A stretch of DNA of 64,000 bases from positions 5,394,001 to 5,458,000 of the forward strand of contig OZ176054.1 of NCBI GenBank assembly GCA_964247055.1. Direction: 5' to 3'. The first letter of the stretch is position 1, and every line of letters starts with the position of its first letter. Both the position numbers and the translations under genes were made by a program. The DNA is from Paragordius varius. Taxonomy: Eukaryota > Animalia > Nematomorpha. Of this stretch, positions 712 through 28,629 are shown in pieces. The notes under the pieces are model-generated. The model saw nothing but the letters and a program-made list of their open reading frames with translations. It did no database searches and was not told the origin of the DNA.

Positions 712-3700
712 TCTATATATTTATAAAAATGGAAAATGCTGGCTTTGTGATCTGGTACAGGAAAACCGGTAGACCCAATCAAATCCAAATATCGAAAAAA
801 TATAATCATTAATAAATGTCCCGACAATAGCTTCGCCCTTTTTTTGAAATATGCCCCCAGTTCGGGCCCACCCCGTATGAAAAACGGGTTTTTTTTGAAA
901 ACAGAAGTCCACAAAATCGTGTTTTTGAGACAATTTTCCGGAGAACGTGTTGGACCATTCAATTTCAAATATGATTTTTGTTTACTTATTTTCGATTGCG
1001 CCGAACATAGTCGAGTCACTTTTTTGATTTAGGCCCTCTTTTTACCCGCTCCCCCCGTAAAATGCCATTTTTTTCAAAAAACAAAGTCCACAAAAATAAT
1101 TTTTTAAATCGATTTTTCGTCCTAGGTATGAGACCTTAAAAATTCAATAAAGATTCCACGTATTCCCTGTTAAAAGGCAAAAATTTTAGTCCACCGTTTA
1201 TTTGATGATAGCTGCTGGGTAAGGAGCTACCCGCTAAAAACTGATTTTTCATATAACTTTGTGATCTGTTTCCGGAAAACCGGTGAACCCATTCAAATCC
1301 AAACATCGAAAAAATATAATCATTAATGAATGCCCCGACAATAGCTTCGCCCTTTTTTGGAATTAGGTCCCCAGTTTGGGCCCACCCCGTGTGAAAAATG
1401 GGTTAAGTCAATTTTTTGGAGAACGTGTTGGACCATTCAATTTCAAATATGATTTTTGTTTACTTATTTTCGATTGCGCCGAACATAGTCGAGTCACTTT
1501 TTTGATTTAGGCCCTCTTTTTACCCGCTACCCCCGTAAAATGCCATTTTTTTCAAAAAACAAAGTCCACAAAAATAATTTTTTAAATCGATTTTTCGTCC
1601 TAGGTATGAGACCTTAAAAATTCAATAAAGATTCCACGTATTCCCTGTTAAAAGGCAAAAATTTTAGTCCACCGTTTATTTGATGATAGCTGCTGGGTAA
1701 GGAGCTACCCGCTAAAAACTGATTTTTCATATAACTTTGTGATCTGTTTCCGGAAAACCGGTGAACCCATTCAAATCCAAACATCGAAAAAATATAATCA
1801 TTAATGAATGCCCCGACAATAGCTTCGCCCTTTTTTGGAATTAGGTCCCCAGTTTGGGCCCACCCCGTGTGAAAAATGGGTTAAGTCAATTTTTTGGAGA
1901 ACGTGTTGGACCATTCAATTTCAAATATGATTTTTGTTTACTTATTTTCGATTGCGCCGAACATAGTCGAGTCACTTTTTTGATTTAGGCCCTCTTTTTA
2001 CCCGCTACCCCCGTAAAATGCCATTTTTTTCAAAAAAAAACAAAGTCCACAAAAATATTTTTTTGATTGTATTTTTTTGTCCACGGTATGAGACTGTAAA
2101 AATTCGAGAAAGATTTTTCGTATTGCCTGTTAAAAGGCAAAAATTTTAGTCAAGCGTTTCTTTGATGATAGCTGCTGAGTAAGGAGTATCTATCATATGT
2201 ATAGCATGTTAAAAGATATATGGATATTAATACATTATTTATCCTCATCTATCTATATATTTATAAAAATGGAAAATGCTGGCTTTGTGATCTGGTACAG
2301 GAAAACCGGTAGACCCAATCAAATCCAAATATCGATAAAATATAATCATTAATAAATGTCCCGACAATAGCTTCGCCCTTTTTTTGAAATAGGCCCCCAG
2401 TTCGGGCCCACCCCGTATGAAAAACGGGTTTTTTTTGAAAACAGAAGTCCACAAAATCGTGTTTTTGAGACAATTTTCCGGAGAACGTGTTGGACCATTC
2501 AATTTCAAATATGATTTTTGTTTACTTATTTTCGATTGCGCCGAACATAGTCGAGCCACTTTTTTGATTTAGGCCCTCTTTTTACCCGCTCCCCCCGTAA
2601 AATGCCATTTTTTTCAAAAAACAAAGTCCACAAAAATAATTTTCTAAATCGATTTTTCGCCCTAGGTACGAGACCGTAAAAATTCAATAAAGATTCCACG
2701 TATTCCCTGTTAAAAGGCAAAAATTTTAGTCCACCGTTTATTTGATGATAGCTGCTGGGTAAGGAGCTACCCGCTAAAAACTGATTTTTCATATAACTTT
2801 GTGAACTGTTTCCGGAAAATCGGTGATCCCAATCAAATCCAAATATCGAAAAAATATAATCATTAATGAATGCCCCGACAATAGCTTCGCCCTTTTTTGG
2901 AATTAGGTCCCCAGTTCGGGCCCACCCCGTGTGAAAAATGGGTTAAGTCAATTTTTTGGAGAACGTGTTGGACCATTCAATTTCAAATATGATTTTTGTT
3001 TACTTATTTTTGATCGCGCTGAACATAGTCGAGTCACTTTTTTGATTTAGGCCCTCTTTTTACCCGCTACCCCCGTAAAATGCCATTTTTTTCAAAAAAA
3101 AACAAAGTCCACAAAAATATTTTTTTGATTGTATTTTTTTGTCCACGGTATGAGACTGTAAAAATTCGAGAAAGATTTTTCGTAATGCCTGTTAAAAGGC
3201 AAAAATTTTAGTCAAGCGTTTCTTTGATGATAGCTGCTGAGTAAGGAGTATCTATCATATGTATAGCATGTTAAAAGATATATGGATATTAATACATTAT
3301 TTATCCTCATCTATATATTTATAAAAATGGAAAATGCTGGCTTTGTGATCTGGTACAGGAAAACCGGTAGACCCAATCAAATCCAAATATCGAAAAAATA
3401 TAATCATTAATAAATGTCCCGACAATAGCTTCGCCCTTTTTTTGAAATATGCCCCCAGTTCGGGCCCACCCCGTATGAAAAACGGGTTTTTTTTGAAAAC
3501 AGAAGTCCACAAAATCGTGTTTTTGAGACAATTTTCCGGAGAACGTGTTGGACCATTCAATTTCAAATATAATTTTTGTTTACTTATTTTCGATTGCGCC
3601 GAACATAGTCGAGCCACTTTTTTGATTTAGGCCCTCTTTTTACCCGCTCCCCCCGTAAAATGCCATTTTTTTCAAAAAACAAAGTCCACAAAAATAATTT

Positions 3701-6700
3701 TCTAAATCGATTTTTCGCCCTAGGTACGAGACCGTAAAAATTCAATAAAGATTCCACGTATTCCCTGTTAAAAGGCAAAAATTTTAGTCCACCGTTTATT
3801 TGATGATAGCTGCTGGGTAAGGAGCTACCCGCTAAAAACTGATTTTTCATATAACTTTGTGAACTGTTTCCGGAAAATCGGTGATCCCAATCAAATCCAA
3901 ATATCGAAAAAATATAATCATTAATGAATGCCCCGACAATAGCTTCGCCCTTTTTTGGAATTAGGTCCCCAGTTCGGGCCCACCCCGTGTGAAAAATGGG
4001 TTAAGTCAATTTTTTGGAGAACGTGTTGGACCATTCAATTTCAAATATGATTTTTGTTTACTTATTTTCGATTGCGCCGAACATAGTCGAGTCACTTTTT
4101 TGATTTAGGCCCTCTTTTTACCCGCTACCCCCGTAAAATGCCATTTTTTTCAAAAAAAAACAAAGTCCACAAAAATATTTTTTTGATTGTATTTTTTGTC
4201 CACGGTATGAGACTGTAAAAATTCGAGAAAGATTTTTCGTATTGCCTGTTAAAAGGCAAAAATTTTAGTCAAGCGTTTCTTTGATGATAGCTGCTGAGTA
4301 AAGAGTATCTATCATATGTATAGCATGTTAAAAGATATATGGATATTAATACATTATTTATCCTCATCTATATATTTATAAAAATGGAAAATGCTGGCTT
4401 TGTGATCTGGTACAGGAAAACCGGTAGACCCAATCAAATCCAAATATCGATAAAATATAATCATTAATAAATGTCCCGACAATAGCTTCGCCCTTTTTTT
4501 GAAATAGGCCCCCAGTTCGGGCCCACCCCGTATGAAAAACGGGTTTTTTTTGAAAACAGAAGTCCACAAAATCGTGTTTTTGAGACAATTTTCCGGAGAA
4601 CGTGTTGGACCATTCAATTTCAAATATGATTTTTGTTTACTTATTTTCGATTGCGCCGAACATAGTCGAGCCACTTTTTTGATTTAGGCCCTCTTTTTAC
4701 CCGCTCCCCCCGTAAAATGCCATTTTTTTCAAAAAACAAAGTCCACAAAAATAATTTTTTAAATCGATTTTTCGCCCTAGGTACGAGACCGTAAAAATTC
4801 AATAAAGATTCCACGTATTCCCTGTTAAAAGGCAAAAATTTTAGTCCACCGTTTATTTGATGATAGCTGCTGGGTAAGGAGCTACCCGCTAAAAACTGAT
4901 TTTTCATATAACTTTGTGAACTGTTTCCGGAAAATCGGTGATCCCAATCAAATCCAAATATCGAAAAAATATAATCATTAATGAATGCCCCGACAATAGC
5001 TTCGCCCTTTTTTGGAATTAGGTCCCCAGTTTGGGCCCACCCCGTGTGAAAAATGGGTTAAGTCAATTTTTTGGAGAACGTGTTGGACCATTCAATTTCA
5101 AATATGAATTTTGTTTACTTATTTTTGATCGCGCTGAACATAGTCGAGTCACATTTTTGATTTAGGCCCTCTTTTTACCCGCTACCCCCGTAAAATGCCA
5201 TTTTTTTCAAAAAAAAACAAAGTCCACAAAAATATTTTTTTGATTGTATTTTTTTGTCCACGGTATGAGACTGTAAAAATTCGAGAAAGATTTTTCGTAA
5301 TGCCTGTTAAAAGGCAAAAATTTTAGTCAAGCGTTTCTTTGATGATAGCTGCTGAGTAAGGAGTATCTATCATATGTATAGCATGTTAAAAGATATATGG
5401 ATATTAATACATTATTTATCCTCATCTATATATTTATAAAAATGGAAAATGCTGGCTTTGTGATCTGGTACAGGAAAACCGGTAGACCCAATCAAATCCA
5501 AATATCGAAAAAATATAATCATTAATAAATGTCCCGACAATAGCTTCGCCCTTTTTTTGAAATATGCCCCCAGTTCGGGCCCACCCCGTATGAAAAACGG
5601 GTTTTTTTTGAAAACAGAAGTCCACAAAATCGTGTTTTTGAGACAATTTTCCGGAGAACGTGTTGGACCATTCAATTTCAAATATGATTTTTGTTTACTT
5701 ATTTTGGATTGCGCCGAACATAGTCGAGTCACTTTTTTGATTTAGGCCCTCTTTTTACCCGCTCCCCCCGTAAAATGCCATTTTTTTCAAAAAACAAAGT
5801 CCACAAAAATAATTTTTTAAATCGATTTTTCGTCCTAGGTATGAGACCGTAAAAATTCAATAAAGATTCCACGTAAAAGGCAAAAATTTTAGTCCACCGT
5901 TTATTTGATGATAGCTGCTGGGTAAGGAGCTACCCGCTAAAAACTGATTTTTCATATAACTTTGTGATCTGTTTCCGGAAAACCGGTGAACCCATTCAAA
6001 TCCAAACATCGAAAAAATATAATCATTAATGAATGCCCCGACAATAGCTTCGCCCTTTTTTGGAATTAGGTCCCCAGTTTGGGCCCACCCCGTGTGAAAA
6101 ATGGGTTAAGTCAATTTTTTGGAGAACGTGTTGGACCATTCAATTTCAAATATGATTTTTGTTTACTTATTTTCGATTGCGCCGAACATAGTCGAGTCAC
6201 TTTTTTGATTTAGGCCCTCTTTTTACCCGCTACCCCCGTAAAATGCCATTTTTTTTCAAAAAAAAACAAAGTCCACAAAAATATTTTTTTGATTGTATTT
6301 TTTTGTCCACGGTATGAGACTGTAAAAATTCGAGAAAGATTTTTCGTATTGCCTGTTAAAAGGCAAAAATTTTAGTCAAGCGTTTCTTTGATGATAGCTG
6401 CTGAGTAAGGAGTATCTATCATATGTATAGCATGTTAAAAGATATATGGATATTAATACATTATTTATCCTCATCTATATATTTATAAAAATGGAAAATG
6501 CTGGCTTTGTGATCTGGTACAGGAAAACCGGTAGACCCAATCAAATCCAAATATCGAAAAAATATAATCATTAATAAATGTCCCGACAATAGCTTCGCCC
6601 TTTTTTTGAAATATGCCCCCAGTTCGGGCCCACCCCGTATGAAAAACGGGTTTTTTTTGAAAACAGAAGTCCACAAAATCGTGTTTTTGAGACAATTTTC

Positions 6701-9700
6701 CGGAGAACGTGTTGGACCATTCAATTTCAAATATGATTTTTGTTTACTTATTTTGGATTGCGCCGAACATAGTCGAGTCACTTTTTTGATTTAGGCCCTC
6801 TTTTTACCCGCTCCCCCCGTAAAATGCCATTTTTTTCAAAAAACAAAGTCCACAAAAATAATTTTTTAAATCGATTTTTCGTCCTAGGTATGAGACCTTA
6901 AAAATTCAATAAAGATTCCACGTAAAAGGCAAAAATTTTAGTCCACCGTTTATTTGATGATAGCTGCTGGGTAAGGAGCTACCCGCTAAAAACTGATTTT
7001 TCATATAACTTTGTGATCTGTTTCCGGAAAACCGGTGAACCCATTCAAATCCAAACATCGAAAAAATATAATCATTAATGAATGCCCCGACAATAGCTTC
7101 GCCCTTTTTTGGAATTAGGTCCCCAGTTTGGGCCCACCCCGTGTGAAAAATGGGTTAAGTCAATTTTTTGGAGAACGTGTTGGACCATTCAATTTCAAAT
7201 ATGATTTTTGTTTACTTATTTTCGATTGCGCCGAACATAGTCGAGTCACTTTTTTGATTTAGGCCCTCTTTTTACCCGCTACCCCCGTAAAATGCCATTT
7301 TTTTTCAAAAAAAAACAAAGTCCACAAAAATATTTTTTTGATTGTATTTTTTTGTCCACGGTATGAGACTGTAAAAATTCGAGAAAGATTTTTCGTATTG
7401 CCTGTTAAAAGGCAAAAATTTTAGTCAAGCGTTTCTTTGATGATAGCTGCTGAGTAAGGAGTATCTATCATATGTATAGCATGTTAAAAGATATATGGAT
7501 ATTAATACATTATTTATCCTCATCTATATATTTATAAAAATGGAAAATGCTGGCTTTGTGATCTGGTACAGGAAAACCGGTAGACCCAATCAAATCCAAA
7601 TATCGAAAAAATATAATCATTAATAAATGTCCCGACAATAGCTTCGCCCTTTTTTTGAAATATGCCCCCAGTTCGGGCCCACCCCGTATGAAAAACGGGT
7701 TTTTTTTGAAAACAGAAGTCCACAAAATCGTGTTTTTGAGACAATTTTCCGGAGAACGTGTTGGACCATTCAATTTCAAATATGATTTTTGTTTACTTAT
7801 TTTGGATTGCGCCGAACATAGTCGAGTCACTTTTTTGATTTAGGCCCTCTTTTTACCCGCTCCCCCCGTAAAATGCCATTTTTTTCAAAAAACAAAGTCC
7901 ACAAAAATAATTTTTTAAATCGATTTTTCGTCCTAGGTATGAGACCTTAAAAATTCAATAAAGATTCCACGTAAAAGGCAAAAATTTTAGTCCACCGTTT
8001 ATTTGATGATAGCTGCTGGGTAAGGAGCTACCCGCTAAAAACTGATTTTTCATATAACTTTGTGATCTGTTTCCGGAAAACCGGTGAACCCATTCAAATC
8101 CAAACATCGAAAAAATATAATCATTAATGAATGCCCCGACAATAGCTTCGCCCTTTTTTGGAATTAGGTCCCCAGTTTGGGCCCACCCCGTGTGAAAAAT
8201 GGGTTAAGTCAATTTTTTGGAGAACGTGTTGGACCATTCAATTTCAAATATGATTTTTGTTTACTTATTTTCGATTGCGCCGAACATAGTCGAGTCACTT
8301 TTTTGATTTAGGCCCTCTTTTTACCCGCTACCCCCGTAAAATGCCATTTTTTTTCAAAAAAAAACAAAGTCCACAAAAATATTTTTTTGATTGTATTTTT
8401 TTGTCCACGGTATGAGACTGTAAAAATTCGAGAAAGATTTTTCGTATTGCCTGTTAAAAGGCAAAAATTTTAGTCAAGCGTTTCTTTGATGATAGCTGCT
8501 GAGTAAGGAGTATCTATCATATGTATAGCATGTTAAAAGATATATGGATATTAATACATTATTTATCCTCATCTATATATTTATAAAAATGGAAAATGCT
8601 GGCTTTGTGATCTGGTACAGGAAAACCGGTAGACCCAATCAAATCCAAATATCGAAAAAATATAATCATTAATAAATGTCCCGACAATAGCTTCGCCCTT
8701 TTTTTGAAATATGCCCCCAGTTCGGGCCCACCCCGTATGAAAAACGGGTTTTTTTTGAAAACAGAAGTCCACAAAATCGTGTTTTTGAGACAATTTTCCG
8801 GAGAACGTGTTGGACCATTCAATTTCAAATATGATTTTTGTTTACTTATTTTGGATTGCGCCGAACATAGTCGAGTCACTTTTTTGATTTAGGCCCTCTT
8901 TTTACCCGCTCCCCCCGTAAAATGCCATTTTTTTCAAAAAACAAAGTCCACAAAAATAATTTTTTAAATCGATTTTTCGTCCTAGGTATGAGACCTTAAA
9001 AATTCAATAAAGATTCCACGTAAAAGGCAAAAATTTTAGTCCACCGTTTATTTGATGATAGCTGCTGGGTAAGGAGCTACCCGCTAAAAACTGATTTTTC
9101 ATATAACTTTGTGATCTGTTTCCGGAAAACCGGTGAACCCATTCAAATCCAAACATCGAAAAAATATAATCATTAATGAATGCCCCGACAATAGCTTCGC
9201 CCTTTTTTGGAATTAGGTCCCCAGTTTGGGCCCACCCCGTGTGAAAAATGGGTTAAGTCAATTTTTTGGAGAACGTGTTGGACCATTCAATTTCAAATAT
9301 GATTTTTGTTTACTTATTTTCGATTGCGCCGAACATAGTCGAGTCACTTTTTTGATTTAGGCCCTCTTTTTACCCGCTACCCCCGTAAAATGCCATTTTT
9401 TTTCAAAAAAAAACAAAGTCCACAAAAATATTTTTTTGATTGTATTTTTTTGTCCACGGTATGAGACTGTAAAAATTCGAGAAAGATTTTTCGTATTGCC
9501 TGTTAAAAGGCAAAAATTTTAGTCAAGCGTTTCTTTGATGATAGCTGCTGAGTAAGGAGTATCTATCATATGTATAGCATGTTAAAAGATATATGGATAT
9601 TAATACATTATTTATCCTCATCTATATATTTATAAAAATGGAAAATGCTGGCTTTGTGATCTGGTACAGGAAAACCGGTAGACCCAATCAAATCCAAATA

Positions 9701-12700
9701 TCGAAAAAATATAATCATTAATAAATGTCCCGACAATAGCTTCGCCCTTTTTTTGAAATATGCCCCCAGTTCGGGCCCACCCCGTATGAAAAACGGGTTT
9801 TTTTTGAAAACAGAAGTCCACATCGTGTTTTTGAGACAATTTTCCGGAGAACGTGTTGGACCATTCAATTTCAAATATGATTTTTGTTTACTTATTTTCG
9901 ATTGCGCCGAACATAGTCGAGTCACTTTTTTGATTTAGGCCCTCTTTTTACCCGCTCCCCCCGTAAAATGCCATTTTTTTCAAAAAACAAAGTCCACAAA
10001 AATAATTTTTTAAATCGATTTTTCGTCCTAGGTATGAGACCTTAAAAATTCAATAAAGATTCCACGTATTCCCTGTTAAAAGGCAAAAATTTTAGTCCAC
10101 CGTTTATTTGATGATAGCTGCTGGGTAAGGAGCTACCCGCTAAAAACTGATTTTTCATATAACTTTGTGATCTGTTTCCGGAAAACCGGTGAACCCATTC
10201 AAATCCAAACATCGAAAAAATATAATCATTAATGAATGCCCCGACAATAGCTTCGCCCTTTTTTGGAATTAGGTCCCCAGTTTGGGCCCACCCCGTGTGA
10301 AAAATGGGTTAAGTCAATTTTTTGGAGAACGTGTTGGACCATTCAATTTCAAATATGATTTTTGTTTACTTATTTTCGATTGCGCCGAACATAGTCGAGT
10401 CACTTTTTTGATTTAGGCCCTCTTTTTACCCGCTACCCCCGTAAAATGCCATTTTTTTCAAAAAAAAACAAAGTCCACAAAAATATTTTTTTGATTGTAT
10501 TTTTTTGTCCACGGTATGAGACTGTAAAAATTCGAGAAAGATTTTTCGTATTGCCTGTTAAAAGGCAAAAATTTTAGTCAAGCGTTTCTTTGATGATAGC
10601 TGCTGAGTAAGGAGTATCTATCATATGTATAGCATGTTAAAAGTTATATGGATATTAATACATTATTTATCCTCATCTATATATTTATAAAAATGGAAAA
10701 TGCTGGCTTTGTGATCTGGTACAGGAAAACCGGTAGACCCAATCAAATCCAAATATCGAAAAAATATAATCATTAATAAATGTCCCGACAATAGCTTCGC
10801 CCTTTTTTTGAAATATGCCCCCAGTTCGGGCCCACCCCGTATGAAAAACGGGTTTTTTTTGAAAACAGAAGTCCACATCGTGTTTTTGAGACAATTTTCC
10901 GGAGAACGTGTTGGACCATTCAATTTCAAATATGATTTTTGTTTACTTATTTTCGATTGCGCCGAACATAGTCGAGTCACTTTTTTGATTTAGGCCCTCT
11001 TTTTACCCGCTCCCCCCGTAAAATGCCATTTTTTTCAAAAAACAAAGTCCACAAAAATAATTTTTTAAATCGATTTTTCGTCCTAGGTATGAGACCTTAA
11101 AAATTCAATAAAGATTCCACGTATTCCCTGTTAAAAGGCAAAAATTTTAGTCCACCGTTTATTTGATGATAGCTGCTGGGTAAGGAGCTACCCGCTAAAA
11201 ACTGATTTTTCATATAACTTTGTGATCTGTTTCCGGAAAACCGGTGAACCCATTCAAATCCAAACATCGAAAAAATATAATCATTAATGAATGCCCCGAC
11301 AATAGCTTCGCCCTTTTTTGGAATTAGGTCCCCAGTTTGGGCCCACCCCGTGTGAAAAATGGGTTAAGTCAATTTTTTGGAGAACGTGTTGGACCATTCA
11401 ATTTCAAATATGATTTTTGTTTACTTATTTTCGATTGCGCCGAACATAGTCGAGTCACTTTTTTGATTTAGGCCCTCTTTTTACCCGCTACCCCCGTAAA
11501 ATGCCATTTTTTTTCAAAAAAAAACAAAGTCCACAAAAATATTTTTTTGATTGTATTTTTTTGTCCACGGTATGAGACTGTAAAAATTCGAGAAAGATTT
11601 TTCGTATTGCCTGTTAAAAGGCAAAAATTTTAGTCAAGCGTTTCTTTGATGATAGCTGCTGAGTAAGGAGTATCTATCATATGTATAGCATGTTAAAAGA
11701 TATATGGATATTAATACATTATTTATCCTCATCTATATATTTATAAAAATGGAAAATGCTGGCTTTGTGATCTGGTACAGGAAAACCGGTAGACCCAATC
11801 AAATCCAAATATCGAAAAAATATAATCATTAATAAATGTCCCGACAATAGCTTCGCCCTTTTTTTGAAATATGCCCCCAGTTCGGGCCCACCCCGTATGA
11901 AAAACGGGTTTTTTTTGAAAACAGAAGTCCACAAAATCGTGTTTTTGAGACAATTTTCCGGAGAACGTGTTGGACCATTCAATTTCAAATATGATTTTTG
12001 TTTACTTATTTTGGATTGCGCCGAACATAGTCGAGTCACTTTTTTGATTTAGGCCCTCTTTTTACCCGCTCCCCCCGTAAAATGCCATTTTTTTCAAAAA
12101 ACAAAGTCCACAAAAATAATTTTTTAAATCGATTTTTCGTCCTAGGTATGAGACCTTAAAAATTCAATAAAGATTCCACGTAAAAGGCAAAAATTTTAGT
12201 CCACCGTTTATTTGATGATAGCTGCTGGGTAAGGAGCTACCCGCTAAAAACTGATTTTTCATATAACTTTGTGATCTGTTTCCGGAAAACCGGTGAACCC
12301 ATTCAAATCCAAACATCGAAAAAATATAATCATTAATGAATGCCCCGACAATAGCTTCGCCCTTTTTTGGAATTAGGTCCCCAGTTTGGGCCCACCCCGT
12401 GTGAAAAATGGGTTAAGTCAATTTTTTGGAGAACGTGTTGGACCATTCAATTTCAAATATGATTTTTGTTTACTTATTTTCGATTGCGCCGAACATAGTC
12501 GAGTCACTTTTTTGATTTAGGCCCTCTTTTTACCCGCTACCCCCGTAAAATGCCATTTTTTTTCAAAAAAAAACAAAGTCCACAAAAATATTTTTTTGAT
12601 TGTATTTTTTTGTCCACGGTATGAGACTGTAAAAATTCGAGAAAGATTTTTCGTATTGCCTGTTAAAAGGCAAAAATTTTAGTCAAGCGTTTCTTTGATG

Positions 12701-15700
12701 ATAGCTGCTGAGTAAGGAGTATCTATCATATGTATAGCATGTTAAAAGATATATGGATATTAATACATTATTTATCCTCATCTATATATTTATAAAAATG
12801 GAAAATGCTGGCTTTGTGATCTGGTACAGGAAAACCGGTAGACCCAATCAAATCCAAATATCGAAAAAATATAATCATTAATAAATGTCCCGACAATAGC
12901 TTCGCCCTTTTTTTGAAATATGCCCCCAGTTCGGGCCCACCCCGTATGAAAAACGGGTTTTTTTTGAAAACAGAAGTCCACAAAATCGTGTTTTTGAGAC
13001 AATTTTCCGGAGAACGTGTTGGACCATTCAATTTCAAATATGATTTTTGTTTACTTATTTTGGATTGCGCCGAACATAGTCGAGTCACTTTTTTGATTTA
13101 GGCCCTCTTTTTACCCGCTCCCCCCGTAAAATGCCATTTTTTTCAAAAAACAAAGTCCACAAAAATAATTTTTTAAATCGATTTTTCGTCCTAGGTATGA
13201 GACCTTAAAAATTCAATAAAGATTCCACGTAAAAGGCAAAAATTTTAGTCCACCGTTTATTTGATGATAGCTGCTGGGTAAGGAGCTACCCGCTAAAAAC
13301 TGATTTTTCATATAACTTTGTGATCTGTTTCCGGAAAACCGGTGAACCCATTCAAATCCAAACATCGAAAAAATATAATCATTAATGAATGCCCCGACAA
13401 TAGCTTCGCCCTTTTTTGGAATTAGGTCCCCAGTTTGGGCCCACCCCGTGTGAAAAATGGGTTAAGTCAATTTTTTGGAGAACGTGTTGGACCATTCAAT
13501 TTCAAATATGATTTTTGTTTACTTATTTTCGATTGCGCCGAACATAGTCGAGTCACTTTTTTGATTTAGGCCCTCTTTTTACCCGCTACCCCCGTAAAAT
13601 GCCATTTTTTTTCAAAAAAAAACAAAGTCCACAAAAATATTTTTTTGATTGTATTTTTTTGTCCACGGTATGAGACTGTAAAAATTCGAGAAAGATTTTT
13701 CGTATTGCCTGTTAAAAGGCAAAAATTTTAGTCAAGCGTTTCTTTGATGATAGCTGCTGAGTAAGGAGTATCTATCATATGTATAGCATGTTAAAAGATA
13801 TATGGATATTAATACATTATTTATCCTCATCTATATATTTATAAAAATGGAAAATGCTGGCTTTGTGATCTGGTACAGGAAAACCGGTAGACCCAATCAA
13901 ATCCAAATATCGAAAAAATATAATCATTAATAAATGTCCCGACAATAGCTTCGCCCTTTTTTTGAAATATGCCCCCAGTTCGGGCCCACCCCGTATGAAA
14001 AACGGGTTTTTTTTGAAAACAGAAGTCCACATCGTGTTTTTGAGACAATTTTCCGGAGAACGTGTTGGACCATTCAATTTCAAATATGATTTTTGTTTAC
14101 TTATTTTCGATTGCGCCGAACATAGTCGAGTCACTTTTTTGATTTAGGCCCTCTTTTTACCCGCTCCCCCCGTAAAATGCCATTTTTTTCAAAAAACAAA
14201 GTCCACAAAAATAATTTTTTAAATCGATTTTTCGTCCTAGGTATGAGACCTTAAAAATTCAATAAAGATTCCACGTATTCCCTGTTAAAAGGCAAAAATT
14301 TTAGTCCACCGTTTATTTGATGATAGCTGCTGGGTAAGGAGCTACCCGCTAAAAACTGATTTTTCATATAACTTTGTGATCTGTTTCCGGAAAACCGGTG
14401 AACCCATTCAAATCCAAACATCGAAAAAATATAATCATTAATGAATGCCCCGACAATAGCTTCGCCCTTTTTTGGAATTAGGTCCCCAGTTTGGGCCCAC
14501 CCCGTGTGAAAAATGGGTTAAGTCAATTTTTTGGAGAACGTGTTGGACCATTCAATTTCAAATATGATTTTTGTTTACTTATTTTCGATTGCGCCGAACA
14601 TAGTCGAGTCACTTTTTTGATTTAGGCCCTCTTTTTACCCGCTACCCCCGTAAAATGCCATTTTTTTCAAAAAAAAACAAAGTCCACAAAAATATTTTTT
14701 TGATTGTATTTTTTTGTCCACGGTATGAGACTGTAAAAATTCGAGAAAGATTTTTCGTATTGCCTGTTAAAAGGCAAAAATTTTAGTCAAGCGTTTCTTT
14801 GATGATAGCTGCTGAGTAAGGAGTATCTATCATATGTATAGCATGTTAAAAGTTATATGGATATTAATACATTATTTATCCTCATCTATATATTTATAAA
14901 AATGGAAAATGCTGGCTTTGTGATCTGGTACAGGAAAACCGGTAGACCCAATCAAATCCAAATATCGAAAAAATATAATCATTAATAAATGTCCCGACAA
15001 TAGCTTCGCCCTTTTTTTGAAATATGCCCCCAGTTCGGGCCCACCCCGTATGAAAAACGGGTTTTTTTTGAAAACAGAAGTCCACATCGTGTTTTTGAGA
15101 CAATTTTCCGGAGAACGTGTTGGACCATTCAATTTCAAATATGATTTTTGTTTACTTATTTTCGATTGCGCCGAACATAGTCGAGTCACTTTTTTGATTT
15201 AGGCCCTCTTTTTACCCGCTCCCCCCGTAAAATGCCATTTTTTTCAAAAAACAAAGTCCACAAAAATAATTTTTTAAATCGATTTTTCGTCCTAGGTATG
15301 AGACCTTAAAAATTCAATAAAGATTCCACGTATTCCCTGTTAAAAGGCAAAAATTTTAGTCCACCGTTTATTTGATGATAGCTGCTGGGTAAGGAGCTAC
15401 CCGCTAAAAACTGATTTTTCATATAACTTTGTGATCTGTTTCCGGAAAACCGGTGAACCCATTCAAATCCAAACATCGAAAAAATATAATCATTAATGAA
15501 TGCCCCGACAATAGCTTCGCCCTTTTTTGGAATTAGGTCCCCAGTTTGGGCCCACCCCGTGTGAAAAATGGGTTAAGTCAATTTTTTGGAGACGTGTTGG
15601 ACCATTCAATTTCAAATATGATTTTTGTTTACTTATTTTCGATTGCGCCGAACATAGTCGAGTCACTTTTTTGATTTAGGCCCTCTTTTTACCCGCTACC

Positions 15701-18700
15701 CCCGTAAAATGCCATTTTTTTCAAAAAAAAACAAAGTCCACAAAAATATTTTTTTGATTGTATTTTTTTGTCCACGGTATGAGACTGTAAAAATTCGAGA
15801 AAGATTTTTCGTATTGCCTGTTAAAAGGCAAAAATTTTAGTCAAGCGTTTCTTTGATGATAGCTGCTGAGTAAGGAGTATCTATCATATGTATAGCATGT
15901 TAAAAGATATATGGATATTAATACATTATTTATCCTCATCTATATATTTATAAAAATGGAAAATGCTGGCTTTGTGATCTGGTACAGGAAAACCGGTAGA
16001 CCCAATCAAATCCAAATATCGAAAAAATATAATCATTAATAAATGTCCCGACAATAGCTTCGCCCTTTTTTTGAAATAGGCCCCCAGTTCGGGCCCACCC
16101 CGTATGAAAAACGGGTTTTTTTTGAAAACAGAAGTCCACAAAATCGTGTTTTTGAGACAATTTTCCGGAGAACGTGTTGGACCATTCAATTTCAAATATG
16201 ATTTTTGTTTACTTATTTTCGATTGCGCCGAACATAGTCGAGTCACTTTTTTGATTTAGGCCCTCTTTTTACCCGCTCCCCCCGTAAAATGCCATTTTTT
16301 TCAAAAAACAAAGTCCACAAAAATAATTTTTTAAATCGATTTTTCGTCCTAGGTATGAGACTGTAAAAATTCGAGAAAGATTTTTCGTATTGCCTGTTAA
16401 AAGGCAAAAATTTTAGTCAAGCGTTTCTTTGATGATAGCTGCTGAGTAAGGAGTATCTATCATATGTATAGCATGTTAAAAGATATATGGATATTAATAC
16501 ATTATTTATCCTCATCTATATATTTATAAAAATGGAAAATGCTGGCTTTGTGATCTGGTACAGGAAAACCGGTAGACCCAATCAAATCCAAATATCGAAA
16601 AAATATAATCATTAATAAATGTCCCGACAATAGCTTCGCCCTTTTTTTGAAATATGCCCCCAGTTCGGGCCCACCCCGTATGAAAAACGGGTTTTTTTTG
16701 AAAACAGAAGTCCACAAAATCGTGTTTTTGAGACAATTTTCCGGAGAACGTGTTGGACCATTCAATTTCAAATATGATTTTTGTTTACTTATTTTCGATT
16801 GCGCCGAACATAGTCGAGTCACTTTTTTGATTTAGGCCCTCTTTTTACCCGCTCCCCCCGTAAAATGCCATTTTTTTCAAAAAACAAAGTCCACAAAAAT
16901 AATTTTTTAAATCGATTTTTCGTCCTAGGTATGAGACTGTAAAAATTCGAGAAAGATTTTTCGTATTGCCTGTTAAAAGGCAAAAATTTTAGTCAAGCGT
17001 TTCTTTGATGATAGCTGCTGAGTAAGGAGTATCTATCATATGTATAGCATGTTAAAAGATATATGGATATTAATACATTATTTATCCTCATCTATATATT
17101 TATAAAAATGGAAAATGCTGGCTTTGTGATCTGGTACAGGAAAACCAGTAGACCCAATCAAATCCAAATATCGAAAAAATATAATCATTAATAAATGTCC
17201 CGACAATAGCTTCGCCCTTTTTTTGAAATAGGCCCCCAGTTCGGGCCCACCCCGTATGAAAAACGGGTTTTTTTTGAAAACAGAAGTCCACAAAATCGTG
17301 TTTTTGAGACAATTTTCCGGAGAACGTGTTGGACCATTCAATTTCAAATATGATTTTTGTTTACTTATTTTCGATTGCGCCGAACATAGTCGAGTCACTT
17401 TTTTGATTTAGGCCCTCTTTTTACCCGCTCCCCCCGTAAAATGCCATTTTTTTCAAAAAACAAAGTCCACAAAAATAATTTTTTAAATCGATTTTTCGTC
17501 CTAGGTATGAGACTGTAAAAATTCGAGAAAGATTTTTCGTATTGCCTGTTAAAAGGCAAAAATTTTAGTCAAGCGTTTCTTTGATGATAGCTGCTGAGTA
17601 AGGAGTATCTATCATATGTATAGCATGTTAAAAGATATATGGATATTAATACATTATTTATCCTCATCTATATATTTATAAAAATGGAAAATGCTGGCTT
17701 TGTGATCTGGTACAGGAAAACCGGTAGACCCAATCAAATCCAAATATCGAAAAAATATAATCATTAATAAATGTCCCGACAATAGCTTCGCCCTTTTTTT
17801 GAAATATGCCCCCAGTTCGGGCCCACCCCGTATGAAAAACGGGTTTTTTTTGAAAACAGAAGTCCACATCGTGTTTTTGAGACAATTTTCCGGAGAACGT
17901 GTTGGACCATTCAATTTCAAATATGATTTTTGTTTACTTATTTTCGATTGCGCCGAACATAGTCGAGTCACTTTTTTGATTTAGGCCCTCTTTTTACCCG
18001 CTCCCCCCGTAAAATGCCATTTTTTTCAAAAAACAAAGTCCACAAAAATAATTTTTTAAATCGATTTTTCGTCCTAGGTATGAGACCTTAAAAATTCAAT
18101 AAAGATTCCACGTATTCCCTGTTAAAAGGCAAAAATTTTAGTCCACCGTTTATTTGATGATAGCTGCTGGGTAAGGAGCTACCCGCTAAAAACTGATTTT
18201 TCATATAACTTTGTGATCTGTTTCCGGAAAACCGGTGAACCCATTCAAATCCAAACATCGAAAAAATATAATCATTAATGAATGCCCCGACAATAGCTTC
18301 GCCCTTTTTTGGAATTAGGTCCCCAGTTTGGGCCCACCCCGTGTGAAAAATGGGTTAAGTCAATTTTTTGGAGAACGTGTTGGACCATTCAATTTCAAAT
18401 ATGATTTTTGTTTACTTATTTTCGATTGCGCCGAACATAGTCGAGTCACTTTTTTGATTTAGGCCCTCTTTTTACCCGCTACCCCCGTAAAATGCCATTT
18501 TTTTCAAAAAAAAACAAAGTCCACAAAAATATTTTTTTGATTGTATTTTTTTGTCCACGGTATGAGACTGTAAAAATTCGAGAAAGATTTTTCGTATTGC
18601 CTGTTAAAAGGCAAAAATTTTAGTCAAGCGTTTCTTTGATGATAGCTGCTGAGTAAGGAGTATCTATCATATGTATAGCATGTTAAAAGTTATATGGATA

Positions 18701-21700
18701 TTAATACATTATTTATCCTCATCTATATATTTATAAAAATGGAAAATGCTGGCTTTGTGATCTGGTACAGGAAAACCGGTAGACCCAATCAAATCCAAAT
18801 ATCGAAAAAATATAATCATTAATAAATGTCCCGACAATAGCTTCGCCCTTTTTTTGAAATATGCCCCCAGTTCGGGCCCACCCCGTATGAAAAACGGGTT
18901 TTTTTTGAAAACAGAAGTCCACATCGTGTTTTTGAGACAATTTTCCGGAGAACGTGTTGGACCATTCAATTTCAAATATGATTTTTGTTTACTTATTTTC
19001 GATTGCGCCGAACATAGTCGAGTCACTTTTTTGATTTAGGCCCTCTTTTTACCCGCTCCCCCCGTAAAATGCCATTTTTTTCAAAAAACAAAGTCCACAA
19101 AAATAATTTTTTAAATCGATTTTTCGTCCTAGGTATGAGACCTTAAAAATTCAATAAAGATTCCACGTATTCCCTGTTAAAAGGCAAAAATTTTAGTCCA
19201 CCGTTTATTTGATGATAGCTGCTGGGTAAGGAGCTACCCGCTAAAAACTGATTTTTCATATAACTTTGTGATCTGTTTCCGGAAAACCGGTGAACCCATT
19301 CAAATCCAAACATCGAAAAAATATAATCATTAATGAATGCCCCGACAATAGCTTCGCCCTTTTTTGGAATTAGGTCCCCAGTTTGGGCCCACCCCGTGTG
19401 AAAAATGGGTTAAGTCAATTTTTTGGAGAACGTGTTGGACCATTCAATTTCAAATATGATTTTTGTTTACTTATTTTCGATTGCGCCGAACATAGTCGAG
19501 TCACTTTTTTGATTTAGGCCCTCTTTTTACCCGCTACCCCCGTAAAATGCCATTTTTTTCAAAAAAAAACAAAGTCCACAAAAATATTTTTTTGATTGTA
19601 TTTTTTTGTCCACGGTATGAGACTGTAAAAATTCGAGAAAGATTTTTCGTATTGCCTGTTAAAAGGCAAAAATTTTAGTCAAGCGTTTCTTTGATGATAG
19701 CTGCTGAGTAAGGAGTATCTATCATATGTATAGCATGTTAAAAGATATATGGATATTAATACATTATTTATCCTCATCTATATATTTATAAAAATGGAAA
19801 ATGCTGGCTTTGTGATCTGGTACAGGAAAACCGGTAGACCCAATCAAATCCAAATATCGAAAAAATATAATCATTAATAAATGTCCCGACAATAGCTTCG
19901 CCCTTTTTTTGAAATAGGCCCCCAGTTCGGGCCCACCCCGTATGAAAAACGGGTTTTTTTTGAAAACAGAAGTCCACAAAATCGTGTTTTTGAGACAATT
20001 TTCCGGAGAACGTGTTGGACCATTCAATTTCAAATATGATTTTTGTTTACTTATTTTCGATTGCGCCGAACATAGTCGAGTCACTTTTTTGATTTAGGCC
20101 CTCTTTTTACCCGCTCCCCCCGTAAAATGCCATTTTTTTCAAAAAACAAAGTCCACAAAAATAATTTTTTAAATCGATTTTTCGTCCTAGGTATGAGACT
20201 GTAAAAATTCGAGAAAGATTTTTCGTATTGCCTGTTAAAAGGCAAAAATTTTAGTCAAGCGTTTCTTTGATGATAGCTGCTGAGTAAGGAGTATCTATCA
20301 TATGTATAGCATGTTAAAAGATATATGGATATTAATACATTATTTATCCTCATCTATATATTTATAAAAATGGAAAATGCTGGCTTTGTGATCTGGTACA
20401 GGAAAACCGGTAGACCCAATCAAATCCAAATATCGAAAAAATATAATCATTAATAAATGTCCCGACAATAGCTTCGCCCTTTTTTTGAAATATGCCCCCA
20501 GTTCGGGCCCACCCCGTATGAAAAACGGGTTTTTTTTGAAAACAGAAGTCCACAAAATCGTGTTTTTGAGACAATTTTCCGGAGAACGTGTTGGACCATT
20601 CAATTTCAAATATGATTTTTGTTTACTTATTTTCGATTGCGCCGAACATAGTCGAGTCACTTTTTTGATTTAGGCCCTCTTTTTACCCGCTCCCCCCGTA
20701 AAATGCCATTTTTTTCAAAAAACAAAGTCCACAAAAATAATTTTTTAAATCGATTTTTCGTCCTAGGTATGAGACTGTAAAAATTCGAGAAAGATTTTTC
20801 GTATTGCCTGTTAAAAGGCAAAAATTTTAGTCAAGCGTTTCTTTGATGATAGCTGCTGAGTAAGGAGTATCTATCATATGTATAGCATGTTAAAAGATAT
20901 ATGGATATTAATACATTATTTATCCTCATCTATATATTTATAAAAATGGAAAATGCTGGCTTTGTGATCTGGTACAGGAAAACCGGTAGACCCAATCAAA
21001 TCCAAATATCGAAAAAATATAATCATTAATAAATGTCCCGACAATAGCTTCGCCCTTTTTTTGAAATATGCCCCCAGTTCGGGCCCACCCCGTATGAAAA
21101 ACGGGTTTTTTTTGAAAACAGAAGTCCACAAAATCGTGTTTTTGAGACAATTTTCCGGAGAACGTGTTGGACCATTCAATTTCAAATATGATTTTTGTTT
21201 ACTTATTTTCGATTGCGCCGAACATAGTCGAGTCACTTTTTTGATTTAGGCCCTCTTTTTACCCGCTCCCCCCGTAAAATGCCATTTTTTTCAAAAAACA
21301 AAGTCCACAAAAATAATTTTTTAAATCGATTTTTCGTCCTAGGTATGAGACTGTAAAAATTCGAGAAAGATTTTTCGTATTGCCTGTTAAAAGGCAAAAA
21401 TTTTAGTCAAGCGTTTCTTTGATGATAGCTGCTGAGTAAGGAGTATCTATCATATGTATAGCATGTTAAAAGATATATGGATATTAATACATTATTTATC
21501 CTCATCTATATATTTATAAAAATGGAAAATGCTGGCTTTGTGATCTGGTACAGGAAAACCGGTAGACCCAATCAAATCCAAATATCGAAAAAATATAATC
21601 ATTAATAAATGTCCCGACAATAGCTTCGCCCTTTTTTTGAAATAGGCCCCCAGTTCGGGCCCACCCCGTATGAAAAACGGGTTTTTTTTGAAAACAGAAG

Positions 21701-23137
21701 TCCACAAAATCGTGTTTTTGAGACAATTTTCCGGAGAACGTGTTGGACCATTCAATTTCAAATATGATTTTTGTTTACTTATTTTCGATTGCGCCGAACA
21801 TAGTCGAGTCACTTTTTTGATTTAGGCCCTCTTTTTACCCGCTCCCCCCGTAAAATGCCATTTTTTTCAAAAAACAAAGTCCACAAAAATAATTTTTTAA
21901 ATCGATTTTTCGTCCTAGGTATGAGACTGTAAAAATTCGAGAAAGATTTTTCGTATTGCCTGTTAAAAGGCAAAAATTTTAGTCAAGCGTTTCTTTGATG
22001 ATAGCTGCTGAGTAAGGAGTATCTATCATATGTATAGCATGTTAAAAGATATATGGATATTAATACATTATTTATCCTCATCTATATATTTATAAAAATG
22101 GAAAATGCTGGCTTTGTGATCTGGTACAGGAAAACCGGTAGACCCAATCAAATCCAAATATCGAAAAAATATAATCATTAATAAATGTCCCGACAATAGC
22201 TTCGCCCTTTTTTTGAAATATGCCCCCAGTTCGGGCCCACCCCGTATGAAAAACGGGTTTTTTTTGAAAACAGAAGTCCACAAAATCGTGTTTTTGAGAC
22301 AATTTTCCGGAGAACGTGTTGGACCATTCAATTTCAAATATGATTTTTGTTTACTTATTTTCGATTGCGCCGAACATAGTCGAGTCACTTTTTTGATTTA
22401 GGCCCTCTTTTTACCCGCTCCCCCCGTAAAATGCCATTTTTTTCAAAAAACAAAGTCCACAAAAATAATTTTTTAAATCGATTTTTCGTCCTAGGTATGA
22501 GACCTTAAAAATTCAATAAAGATTCCACGTATTCCCTGTTAAAAGGCAAAAATTTTAGTCCACCGTTTATTTGATGATAGCTGCTGGGTAAGGAGCTACC
22601 CGCTAAAAACTGATTTTTCATATAACTTTGTGATCTGTTTCCGGAAAACCGGTGAACCCATTCAAATCCAAACATCGAAAAAATATAATCATTAATGAAT
22701 GCCCCGACAATAGCTTCGCCCTTTTTTGGAATTAGGTCCCCAGTTTGGGCCCACCTCGTGTGAAAAATGGGTTAAGTCAATTTTTTGGAGAACGTGTTGG
22801 ACCATTCAATTTCAAATATGATTTTTGTTTACTTATTTTCGATTGCGCCGAACATAGTCGAGCCACCTTTTTGATTTAGGCCCTCTTTTTACCCGCTCCC
22901 CCCGTAAAATGCCATTTTTTTCAAAAAAAACAAAGTCCACAAAAATATTTTTTTGATTGTATTTTTTTGCCCACGGTATGAGACTGTAAAAATTCGAGAA
23001 GGTTTTTTCGTATTGCCTGTTAAAAGGCAAAAATTTTGGTCAAGCGTTTCTTTGATGATAGATGCTGAGTAAGGAGTATCTATCATATGTATAGCATGTT
23101 AATAGATATATGGATATTAAAACATTATTTATGGTAA
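712..23137. repeat. Tandem satellite-like array: 1 trimer (~1.54 kb), 16 dimers (~1049-1058 bp), 7 monomers (576 bp)
   Basis: Near-identical units. Periods were read from the repeated ORF coordinates (e.g. 6461/7510/8559/9608; 15926/16502/17078/17654; 19764/20340/20916/21492/22068). Each dimer has two diverged subunits (A, B) sharing motifs such as CCGACAATAGCTTCGCCC and GGACCATTCAATTTCAAATATG. Confidence 0.97.
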
Positions 23138-23228
23138 TCTATATATTTATAAAAATGGAAAATGCTGGCTTTGTGATCTACAGGAAAAACGGTACACCCA
23201 TTCAAATCCAAACTTCGAACCCCCCCCA

Positions 23229-23279
23229 GAAGTCCGAAGGACTTCCTCGGGCTGCGTAGCAGCACGAGATTCACGCTAG
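23229..23279 (+). terminator. Helitron 3' terminator: two tandem GC-rich hairpins plus CTAG
   Basis: GAAGTCC-GAA-GGACTTC (23229-23245, perfect 7-bp stem) and CTCG.GCTGC-GTA-GCAGC.CGAG (23246-23268, 9/10-bp stem), then ATTCACG-CTAG. Confidence 0.8.
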
Positions 23280-28607: not shown

Positions 28608-28629
28608 CTGATAAATTGATTTGAATTTG

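What the first reader, a model, noticed from the sequence alone, without database searches (positions are those of the whole stretch)
712..23279. A 22.6-kb satellite that is one Helitron: 25 heads, one tail
Seen: every one of the 24 units, plus the last stub, begins A|TCTATATATTTATAAAAATGG. No internal junction has a hairpin/CTAG (they read ...TTATCCTCA|TC). The only 3' terminator is at 23229-23279, and the flanks rejoin as an A|T site (TTTAAAACAAA|TAAAATTT) with no TSD. Established: Helitrons have 5'-TC and hairpin+CTRR-3' ends, insert at AT, and can form tandem arrays. Inference: this is a new satellite DNA caught forming from a non-autonomous Helitron by rolling-circle re-initiation and/or unequal exchange, with both original termini and the target site intact.
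Basis: partly seen in the sequence, partly recalled or inferred. Interest (0 to 1): 0.9.

Follow-up and report, generated by a model that had tools for sequence, protein, structure and literature searches.

The report
Helitron-bounded satellite: 25 heads, one tail
A 22.6-kb tandem array lies exactly between one rolling-circle transposon (Helitron) start and one Helitron end and repeats the start signal 25 times; the layout is real, but it is already known from plants and fungi, and here it grew mainly by ordinary unequal recombination.

Summary
There are 25 exact copies of the 31-nt head, each preceded by A. One 3' end (two hairpins, then 11 nt to CTAG) abuts T at 23280. There is no target-site duplication, no terminal inverted repeat, and no similarity between flanks and unit.

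- The ends fit a canonical non-autonomous Helitron.
- The array is not a uniform rolling-circle concatemer. Units fall in three length classes (576, about 1055, 1540 bp) that differ by a 478-bp internal sub-repeat.
- The 576-bp unit is an R1/R3 recombinant.
- Multi-unit blocks are duplicated exactly (4,461 bp at an offset of four units).
- The edge units are the most divergent. This is the signature of unequal exchange.
- It is not a new satellite caught forming. In contigs of three sample organisms, head, body and tail reach roughly 10^3-10^4 times the single-copy depth. A fourth, more distant organism holds the same spacer-head-body junction.

First readers of this scan noted at least seven other "n heads, one tail" arrays elsewhere in this genome; I could not check them. 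Arrays with many 5' ends and one 3' end were described in 27 plant genomes (Xiong, Dooner and Du 2016), and multiple 5' termini in Fusarium.

The empty site, the array length on long reads and an autonomous partner remain untested.

Verdict: a new member of a known kind, of moderate interest.

The parts
712..23279 (+). Whole composite non-autonomous Helitron: 24 tandem units, each starting with the 5' terminus, plus a terminal 142-bp stub that carries the only 3' terminus
   Evidence: Flanks show no similarity to the unit beyond chance, and there is no terminal inverted repeat.
711..711 (+). Host A immediately 5' of the first TC
   Evidence...AAAACAAA|TCTATAT
712..742 (+). First of 25 identical 31-nt heads (5' terminus TCTATATATTTATAAAAATGGAAAATGCTGG). 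The others start at 2252, 3310, 4367, 5425, 6474, 7523, 8572, 9621, 10676, 11732, 12781, 13830, 14885, 15939, 16515, 17091, 17667, 18722, 19777, 20353, 20929, 21505, 22081 and 23138.
   Evidence: 25 matches, 0 mismatches, 0 expected
712..2251 (+). Unit A, 1540 bp: head + three copies (R1, R2, R3) of the 478-bp sub-repeat + 60-nt spacer S + TCTA slip
   Evidence: TRF: 931-2186, period 478, 2.6 copies, 96% matches; alignment
2252..5424 (+). Left-edge units B, C, D (1057-1058 bp: head + R1 + R3 + S), 97.3-98.4% identical to the central units
   Evidence: identity matrix; classes
5425..15938 (+). Central units E F F F G H F F G I (1049-1056 bp). They include an exact 4,461-bp duplication, 6923-11383 = 11132-15592, at an offset of 4,209 bp = four units.
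15939..22080 (+). Units J K L G M J K K J. The seven 576-bp units (J, K, L) are R1/R3 recombinants that lack one 478-bp sub-repeat. There is an exact 1,555-bp duplication, 15592 = 19430, at offset 3,838.
22081..23137 (+). Right-edge unit N (1057 bp), the most divergent unit (97.0-98.3%). Its spacer ends GGTAA instead of CCTCA.
23078..23137 (+). Spacer S of the last unit. A 60-nt AT-rich segment lies between the last sub-repeat and the next head in every unit, for example 3250-3309.
   Evidence: alignment
23138..23279 (+). Terminal stub: head (41 nt identical to all the others, then a 3-bp deletion and 5 mismatches over about 40 nt) joined to the 3' terminal module. On its own it is a complete 142-bp mini-Helitron.
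23220..23279 (+). 3' terminal module (C8 run, two hairpins, CTAG). In other genomic copies it is joined to other internal positions or to unrelated sequence.
   Evidence: joints 22919>23222 (X3, X6) and 22755>23183; loose end before 23221 in X8; summed depth 2.2 million against about 700 in the flank
23229..23245 (+). Hairpin 1: GAAGTCC-GAA-GGACTTC
   Evidence: in both the MFE and the centroid structure
23246..23268 (+). Hairpin 2: CTCG.GCTGC-GTA-GCAGC.CGAG, ending 11 nt before the 3' end
   Evidence: The 11-nt spacing is the same as the Helraiser palindrome (PMC4778049).
23276..23279 (+). 3'-terminal CTAG (fits CTRR)
23280..23280 (+). Host T immediately 3' of CTAG. Contigs of two runs (X3 record 10, X6 record 19) start aligning exactly here.
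   Evidence: table 8

Best explanation
Window 712-23279 is one composite, non-autonomous canonical (Helitron1-type) Helitron, inserted at an A|T site 452 bp upstream of a small heat-shock protein gene. Its body is a tandem array whose repeat unit (head - 478-bp sub-repeats - 60-nt spacer) contains a full copy of the element's 5' terminus. The single 3' terminus lies outside the repeated segment. Shown: the array reached its present form by unequal homologous exchange, between sister chromatids or homologues or by replication slippage. This acted at two levels. Between the 478-bp sub-repeats it gave 576, about 1055 and 1540-bp units. Between whole units or blocks of up to four units it gave exact duplicated segments of 1.5-4.5 kb. 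Inferred: once an element holds two heads in direct orientation, every unequal exchange between them adds a head and never a tail. 'n heads, one tail' then follows automatically. How the founder with two heads arose is not shown. Candidates are tandem or nested insertion followed by end bypass, or an event on the circular intermediate. Also inferred: the transposase can start at the outermost head or at any inner head and stop at the one tail. Such arrays would then seed new loci with different head numbers, which would explain the several similar arrays reported elsewhere in this genome.
For: Helitron ends: TC after A at 712; CTAG before T at 23279/23280; a hairpin ending 11 nt from the end, as in Helraiser; no target-site duplication or terminal inverted repeat, and flanks unrelated to the unit. 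The tail occurs once in the window. It is high-copy in reads: the summed contig depth of the tail bin is 2.2 million in X3 against about 500-900 in the unique flank, and 12,890 against about 4 in X6. It is joined to different upstream contexts in other copies. Unequal exchange: three unit length classes differ by the 478-bp sub-repeat. The 576-bp unit switches from R1-type to R3-type sequence within the sub-repeat. Unit order is A B C D E F F F G H F F G I J K L G M J K K J N, with exact duplicated segments of 4,461 bp (offset 4 units), 2,924 bp and 1,555 bp. Edge units are 2-3% diverged while central blocks are identical. Family-wide layout: a 412-nt contig of a more distant organism (X1) carries spacer + head + body at about 96% identity. 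First readers of the scan list at least seven other multi-head arrays in this genome (unchecked). A second Helitron with different ends at 32653-34286(-) carries the same sub-repeat at 83% identity.
Against: No empty allele was seen, so the A|T insertion is read from one filled site only. Dispersed copies were inferred from summed contig depth, which the tool itself says is not a copy number, and from joints; no independent insertion with its own flanks was read. Identical multi-kb blocks could be produced or miscounted by an assembler, and no long read was examined. Unequal exchange explains the present arrangement but does not exclude a rolling-circle origin for the first few units. No autonomous RepHel element with these ends was found or searched genome-wide.
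Confidence: 0.7

Rival explanations
1. Rolling-circle concatemer (the model of Xiong, Dooner and Du 2016). A circular Helitron intermediate lost its 3' terminus. Rolling-circle replication on that truncated circle spun out a head-to-spacer concatemer. The concatemer was integrated with a single terminator, so most of the 24 units were made in one transposition-coupled event.
For: The layout of many 5' ends, one 3' end and units lacking the 3' terminus is exactly the pattern for which that model was proposed. Helitron circles are experimentally shown. All 25 heads are identical over 31 nt.
Against: A single circular template predicts units of one length and one sequence. Here there are three length classes and 14 distinct full-unit sequences (15 with the stub). 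The 576-bp unit is recombinant. Duplications have offsets of four units (4,209 bp) and 3,838 bp rather than one unit. Divergence increases toward the edges. No tail-head (CTAG|TC) junction is present anywhere. At most it could have made a short founder array that was later remodelled.
Confidence: 0.15
2. Two unrelated events. A pre-existing satellite array that merely contains a Helitron-derived motif was hit at its right edge by an independent insertion of an abundant 142-bp mini-Helitron (23138-23279). The array itself is then not bounded by Helitron ends.
For: The stub is a complete mini-Helitron with its own A|TC and CTAG|T. Its body differs from all array units by a 3-bp deletion and 5 mismatches, and the junction before it differs too (GGTAA against CCTCA). 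Tail depth is of the same order as head depth genome-wide, which suggests that many short elements with one head and one tail exist.
Against: The array would then have to begin exactly at the first base of a head after an A, and end exactly at the last base of a spacer. That is two boundaries at phase 0 of a roughly 1-kb unit. The sequence after the stub is not a displaced head or unit: the right flank scores no better than shuffles. An insertion at the spacer|head A|T site should have left a head 3' of CTAG, and none is there.
Confidence: 0.07
3. Assembly artefact. The true locus holds a short Helitron with a few units, and the assembler expanded or mis-ordered near-identical repeats into 22.6 kb.
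For: Several units and multi-kb blocks are 100% identical, which is the situation in which assemblers miscount. No long read was inspected.
Against: The array is a specific, non-periodic order of 14 distinct unit variants with diagnostic indels, which is not the look of a collapsed or expanded consensus. The repeat family is massively present in independent read sets. Similar arrays are reported at many loci (unchecked). This would change the number of units, not the nature of the element.
Confidence: 0.08

Closest known systems
Tandem arrays of truncated Helitrons with multiple 5' ends and a single 3' end in 27 plant genomes (Xiong, Dooner and Du, Plant J 2016; read here only through the summary in PMC12628747 and citations in PMC5148889 and PMC11934779)
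   Same: Many 5' termini in direct orientation, one 3' terminus at the downstream end, units that lack the 3' end, and repeat numbers from a few to hundreds.
   Different: Those arrays are described as partly decayed and mostly centromeric, and are explained by rolling-circle replication of truncated circles. This array is young (97-100% identical units) and lies 452 bp from a gene. It is in an animal, reported by another agent's unchecked note to be a hairworm. Its internal structure points to unequal exchange rather than a uniform concatemer.
Fusarium oxysporum FoHeli elements with multiple 5' termini (PMC5148889)
   Same: Reiterated 5' termini in front of one 3' terminus. The proposed origin is self-insertion or tandem insertion followed by transposition from the outer 5' end to the first 3' end.
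   Different: FoHeli repeats only the first 31-85 nt once or a few times. Here the repeated segment is 576-1540 bp, is reiterated 24 times, and is itself built of sub-repeats.
Helitron/Helentron-borne internal tandem repeats that expand into satellites (DINE-TR1 in Drosophila virilis; Cg170 and other satellites on Helentrons in the Pacific oyster; PMC7492417, PMC8268682, review PMC12628747)
   Same: A non-autonomous rolling-circle element carries central tandem repeats that expand into long arrays and are dispersed through the genome by the element.
   Different: In those cases the repeated unit is internal cargo and does not include the 5' terminus. The oyster and DINE-1 elements are Helentron/Helitron2 type. 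This element has canonical Helitron1 ends, and each repeat unit includes the 5' terminus.
Helraiser/Helibat (PMC4778049) and Helitron head-to-tail tandems in bats and on the Drosophila pseudoobscura Y (PMC9248874)
   Same: 5'-TC and CTAG-3' ends, a palindrome 11 nt upstream of the 3' end, and insertion at A|T. Helitrons are known to occur as tandem copies.
   Different: Those tandems are detected by complete tail-head junctions. Here no junction contains a tail.

Membership tests
Canonical Helitron (Helitron1 type), non-autonomous | 5' end begins TC and abuts a host A | tested here: met
   A|TCTATAT at 711/712; all 25 heads are preceded by A
Canonical Helitron (Helitron1 type), non-autonomous | 3' end is CTRR and abuts a host T | tested here: met
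   ...ATTCACGCTAG|T at 23279/23280
Canonical Helitron (Helitron1 type), non-autonomous | GC-rich hairpin about 10-12 nt upstream of the 3' end | tested here: met
   Two adjacent hairpins at 23229-23245 and 23246-23268. The second ends 11 nt from the end, the same spacing as Helraiser. The whole-stub fold has a z-score of only -1.85, but both stems are in the centroid structure.
Canonical Helitron (Helitron1 type), non-autonomous | No terminal inverted repeats and no target-site duplication | tested here: met
   Head against reverse-complemented tail scores 11, where shuffles average 11.8. The flanks AACAAA / TAAAAT share no adjacent direct repeat.
Canonical Helitron (Helitron1 type), non-autonomous | Termini shared by many copies of a family | tested here: met
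   Summed contig depth over the tail and head is 2-4.6 million in X3 against about 500-900 in the flank, with similar ratios in X6 and X8. The tail is joined to other internal positions and to unrelated sequence in other copies. Caveat: summed depth is not a copy number.
Canonical Helitron (Helitron1 type), non-autonomous | Independent insertions at different A|T sites, and a precise empty site at this locus | tested here: inconclusive
   Contigs X3 record 10 and X6 record 19 start aligning exactly at 23280, with 28 and 6 unaligned letters. Those letters were not shown, and for X3 their side is ambiguous. The genome cannot be searched with these tools.
Canonical Helitron (Helitron1 type), non-autonomous | An autonomous RepHel partner with the same ends | not testable with these tools
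   There is no RepHel-sized ORF in the window. The scan notes hold no Helitron helicase entry. No genome-wide search was available.
Helitron arrays with multiple 5' ends and one 3' end (Xiong et al. 2016) | Several 5' termini in direct orientation followed by a single 3' terminus | tested here: met
   25 heads and 1 tail
Helitron arrays with multiple 5' ends and one 3' end (Xiong et al. 2016) | Uniform units, as expected if made by rolling-circle replication of one truncated circle (the proposed mechanism, not the descriptive definition) | tested here: not met
   Three length classes, 14 distinct full-unit sequences, recombinant units and multi-unit duplicated blocks
Helitron arrays with multiple 5' ends and one 3' end (Xiong et al. 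2016) | Centromeric location (typical, not defining) | not testable with these tools
   Locally the array lies 452 bp upstream of an sHSP gene and within 6 kb of other genes. The position of the centromere is unknown.
Helentron / Helitron2 (DINE-1-like) | Insertion between T and T, with asymmetric or subterminal inverted repeats | tested here: not met
   The flanks are A and T, and the ends share no inverted repeat
Satellite DNA | Long head-to-tail array of a high-copy unit | tested here: met
   22.6 kb and 24 units here. 46,114 contigs were laid in X3, with depth 10^3-10^4 times that of the flank.

The most novel reading that the evidence does not exclude
In this animal lineage one Helitron family works as a self-propagating satellite generator. 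Because every repeat unit carries a functional 5' terminus, the transposase can launch from any head and end at the shared tail. Arrays would then bud off daughter arrays of any length to new A|T sites, and each daughter would regrow by unequal exchange. Transposition and array expansion would be coupled, and together they would have built several per cent of the genome. That would give a directly testable route from transposon to dispersed satellite in animals.
Probability: 0.2. Interest if true: 0.7.

Novelty: new member of a known kind. Interest (0 to 1): 0.4.

Why it matters
How satellites arise from transposons, and how they come to be scattered along chromosome arms, is an active question. 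This locus is an unusually clean specimen. Both Helitron termini and the A|T flanks are intact. The units are young enough (97-100% identical) that individual duplication and recombination events can still be read. It also separates two explanations that are often lumped together. Here the layout of many 5' ends and one 3' end does not need rolling-circle concatemerisation; unequal exchange between reiterated heads and sub-repeats is enough. If the other arrays reported in this genome share unit order truncated from the left, that would show array-bearing Helitrons transposing from internal heads. The phenomenon itself is published for plants and fungi, so the value lies in a well-resolved animal example from a poorly studied phylum, not in a new principle.

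Tried and rejected
- Exact scans of the JGI metagenome contigs for the last 29 nt of the tail and for the head found 0 loci. No dispersed copies could be fetched.
- The look-up of encoding contigs on three ORFs inside the unit (42, 56 and 49 aa), tried as a way to pull other copies out of public assemblies, found nothing on record.
- The search for homologous proteins with exon 1 of the neighbouring sHSP gene, tried to reach orthologous loci and an empty site, found no hit. The 106-aa ORF across the head also found no hit. The organism's proteins appear to be absent from that collection.
- An Rfam scan of 1-3400 at E<=0.1 found nothing, so the unit is not a known RNA gene or a SINE-like tRNA derivative.
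- I tested whether the right flank is a decayed head or unit, prompted by the shared 9-mer ATTTATAAA. The whole flank, its first 60 nt and the left flank score no better than dinucleotide shuffles. Rejected.
- I tested whether the spacer S is a module shared with the second Helitron in the window (TTAAAAGATATA...ATCCTCAT upstream of 34286). The local score is 28, against a shuffle mean of 19.8 and a shuffle maximum of 34. This is suggestive only and is not used.
- A roughly 160-bp sub-sub-periodicity inside the 478-bp sub-repeat is weak: one pair of thirds scores 24 against a shuffle maximum of 23, and the other pairs are at chance.
- The scan's index searched by relatives returned nothing.
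- Read laying was given 2,101 letters, within the 6,000 limit.

Full report
**1.
An exact search finds the head TCTATATATTTATAAAAATGG 25 times between 712 and 23138, always on the + strand. The 31-nt version TCTATATATTTATAAAAATGGAAAATGCTGG has 25 matches with no mismatch, where shuffles give none. Every head follows an A.

Of the 24 internal junctions, 22 read TTATCCTCA|TC. One has a 4-bp TCTA slip at 2248-2251. The last reads TTATGGTAA|TC.

The 3' end CTCGGGCTGCGTAGCAGCACGAGATTCACGCTAG is unique in the 64-kb window even with three mismatches allowed. Folded as single-stranded DNA, the last 51 nt form two adjacent hairpins, at 23229-23245 and 23246-23268. These are followed by exactly 11 nt ending in CTAG. 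The flanks are ...AAAACAAA| and |TAAAATTT.

Neither flank resembles the repeat unit more than shuffled sequence does. The two ends share no inverted repeat.

**2. The ends are those of a canonical Helitron.**
The features are 5'-TC next to A, CTAG-3' next to T, a palindrome 11 nt from the 3' end, and no target-site duplication. These are the hallmarks listed for Helraiser/Helibat (PMC4778049).

The Helentron/Helitron2 alternative requires a T|T target and subterminal inverted repeats. It is not met.

A second element in the window, 32653-34286 on the minus strand, also runs from A|TC to CTAG|T with its own hairpin. Its head and tail are different. It carries the same internal sub-repeat at 83% identity over about 400 bp. 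This genome therefore holds several Helitron families that share cargo.

**3. The anatomy of the array.**
The units are not uniform: one of 1540 bp, sixteen of 1049-1058 bp, seven of 576 bp, and a 142-bp stub. The classes differ by a 478-bp internal sub-repeat (TRF).

Each unit is head + R1 (+R2) + R3 + a 60-nt AT-rich spacer. The 576-bp unit starts as R1 and switches to R3-type sequence within the sub-repeat. It is therefore a recombinant that lost one sub-repeat.

Giving identical units the same letter, the order is A B C D E F F F G H F F G I J K L G M J K K J N, then the stub. The exact duplicated segments are:
- 4,461 bp (6923-11383 = 11132-15592), at an offset of 4,209 bp, which is four units;
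- 2,924 bp, at an offset of one unit;
- 1,555 bp, at an offset of 3,838 bp.

The left-edge units A-D and the right-edge unit N are the most divergent, at 97-98%. The central blocks are identical.

The stub shares its first 41 nt with every head. It then differs by a 3-bp deletion and five mismatches, and joins the 3' module at about 23220.

**4. What this says about mechanism.**
A concatemer spun from one circular template should consist of one unit type at one offset. If the circle were complete, it should contain tail-head junctions. Neither is seen.

What is seen is recombinant sub-repeat numbers, duplications of one to four units at a time, and homogenised centres with divergent edges. That is the classical signature of unequal homologous exchange.

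Once two heads lie in direct orientation in one element, exchange between them multiplies the head-to-spacer segment. It never multiplies the tail, which lies outside the repeated segment. 'Many heads, one tail' therefore needs no special replication step.

How the two-headed founder arose is not shown. Tandem or nested insertion followed by transposition from the outer 5' end to the first 3' end is the model proposed for Fusarium (PMC5148889). Helibat copies inserted next to one another are documented.

**5. This is a family, not a one-off.**
I laid contigs of four public runs on 22600-24700.
- In run X3 the summed contig depth is 2-11.6 million over the repeat and about 500-900 over the unique flank.
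- The bin that holds the last 41 nt of the tail still has 2.2 million. The next bin has 830.
- X6 (about 13,000-108,000 against about 4) and X8 show the same pattern.
- The tool warns that summed depth is not a copy number, so I take only the order of magnitude.
- The tail is as much a high-copy sequence as the head, and depth falls by three orders of magnitude exactly at 23279/23280.
- Joints such as 22919>23222 (in X3 and X6), and a loose end before 23221 in X8, show the 3' module attached to other internal positions or to unrelated sequence in other copies.
- In X1, a more distant organism in which the family is low-copy (18 contigs laid), one 412-nt contig carries spacer + head + body at about 96% identity. 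The head-inside-the-repeat layout is therefore neither private to this locus nor recent.

First readers of this scan also list at least seven other arrays in the same genome with 3 to 16 heads and one tail. I could not read those loci, so they are leads only.

**6. What could not be settled.**
- The empty site. Two contigs (X3 record 10, X6 record 19) begin to align exactly at 23280, with 28 and 6 unaligned letters. The letters were not printed, and for the minus-strand record their side is ambiguous.
- The array length on single long reads.
- The presence of an autonomous RepHel partner.
- Attempts to fetch further copies all failed.
- The organism is called a hairworm relative (Nematomorpha) only in another agent's note. 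This fits the 30% GC and a freshwater metagenome holding some of the repeat's words. It also fits the 200-300 Mb, about 27% GC, repeat-rich genomes described for that phylum. I did not verify it. The papers I read on hairworm genomes mention Helitrons only as a superfamily that is present.

**7. Comparison with what is known.**
- Arrays with multiple 5' ends and a single 3' end, from a few to several hundred repeats, were reported in 27 plant genomes by Xiong, Dooner and Du (2016). They explained them by rolling-circle replication of circles that had lost the terminator. I read this through the review PMC12628747 and citations.
- Multiple 5' termini occur in Fusarium Helitrons.
- Helitron- and Helentron-borne internal repeats that grow into satellites are known from Drosophila virilis and oysters.
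- Head-to-tail Helitron tandems are known from bats and a Drosophila Y chromosome.

The present case belongs to the first class by description but does not fit its proposed mechanism. It differs from the Drosophila and oyster cases in having canonical Helitron1 ends and in reiterating the 5' terminus itself.

**8. Verdict.**
This is a young, exceptionally clean animal example of a published architecture, and its internal record favours unequal exchange over rolling-circle re-initiation. It is a new member of a known kind, of moderate interest. Interest would rise if a comparison of arrays across the genome showed transposition from internal heads.

Noticed in passing
window 32653-34286 (- strand): A second, complete Helitron-like element: A|TCTACTACTC...CAGGGCAGCTAG|T with a short hairpin before the end. 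Its head and tail differ from those of the array. Its first 400 bp (33891-34275) match the array's 478-bp sub-repeat at 83%, followed by more degenerate copies of related repeats.
   Followed up: partly
window 23731-24173 and 24511-24654 (+): A two-exon small heat-shock protein (alpha-crystallin type) gene starts 452 bp downstream of the Helitron tail. Exon 1 found no homologue at E<=0.001 in the large protein collection. Contig depth over part of exon 1 is 2-3 times that of the neighbouring unique sequence in X3, which may mean paralogues.
   Followed up: partly
window 2248-2251: The first internal junction carries an extra TCTA (…CCTCATCTA|TCTATAT). This is a 4-bp slip that duplicates the first four bases of the head.
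   Followed up: yes
each R1/R2 sub-repeat, e.g. 10000-10040 (unit G position 408): A perfect 10-nt palindrome AAATCGATTT lies 8 nt upstream of an internal CTAG (followed by G). It superficially resembles a Helitron end, but it is AT-rich, unrelated to the real tail and not at a junction.
   Followed up: partly
window 34350-34400 (- strand), just upstream of the second Helitron's 5' end: The motif TTAAAAGATATA...ATCCTCAT resembles the array's spacer S (TTAAAAGATATATGG...ATCCTCA|T). The local alignment score is not significant against shuffles. If real, the spacer would be a module shared between Helitron families.
   Followed up: partly
runs X1 (organism A) against X3, X6 and X8 (organisms C, D, E): The repeat family is at thousands of times the single-copy depth in three sample organisms, but only 18 contigs were laid in a fourth that still shares part of the flank. 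This suggests a lineage-specific burst.
   Followed up: no
window 28621-31527 (+): A 968-aa uninterrupted ORF with an N-terminal SAC3/GANP domain (protein-atlas feature score 0.96 to SAC3_GANP clusters). Other notes of the scan place a USP22 gene head-to-head with it.
   Followed up: no
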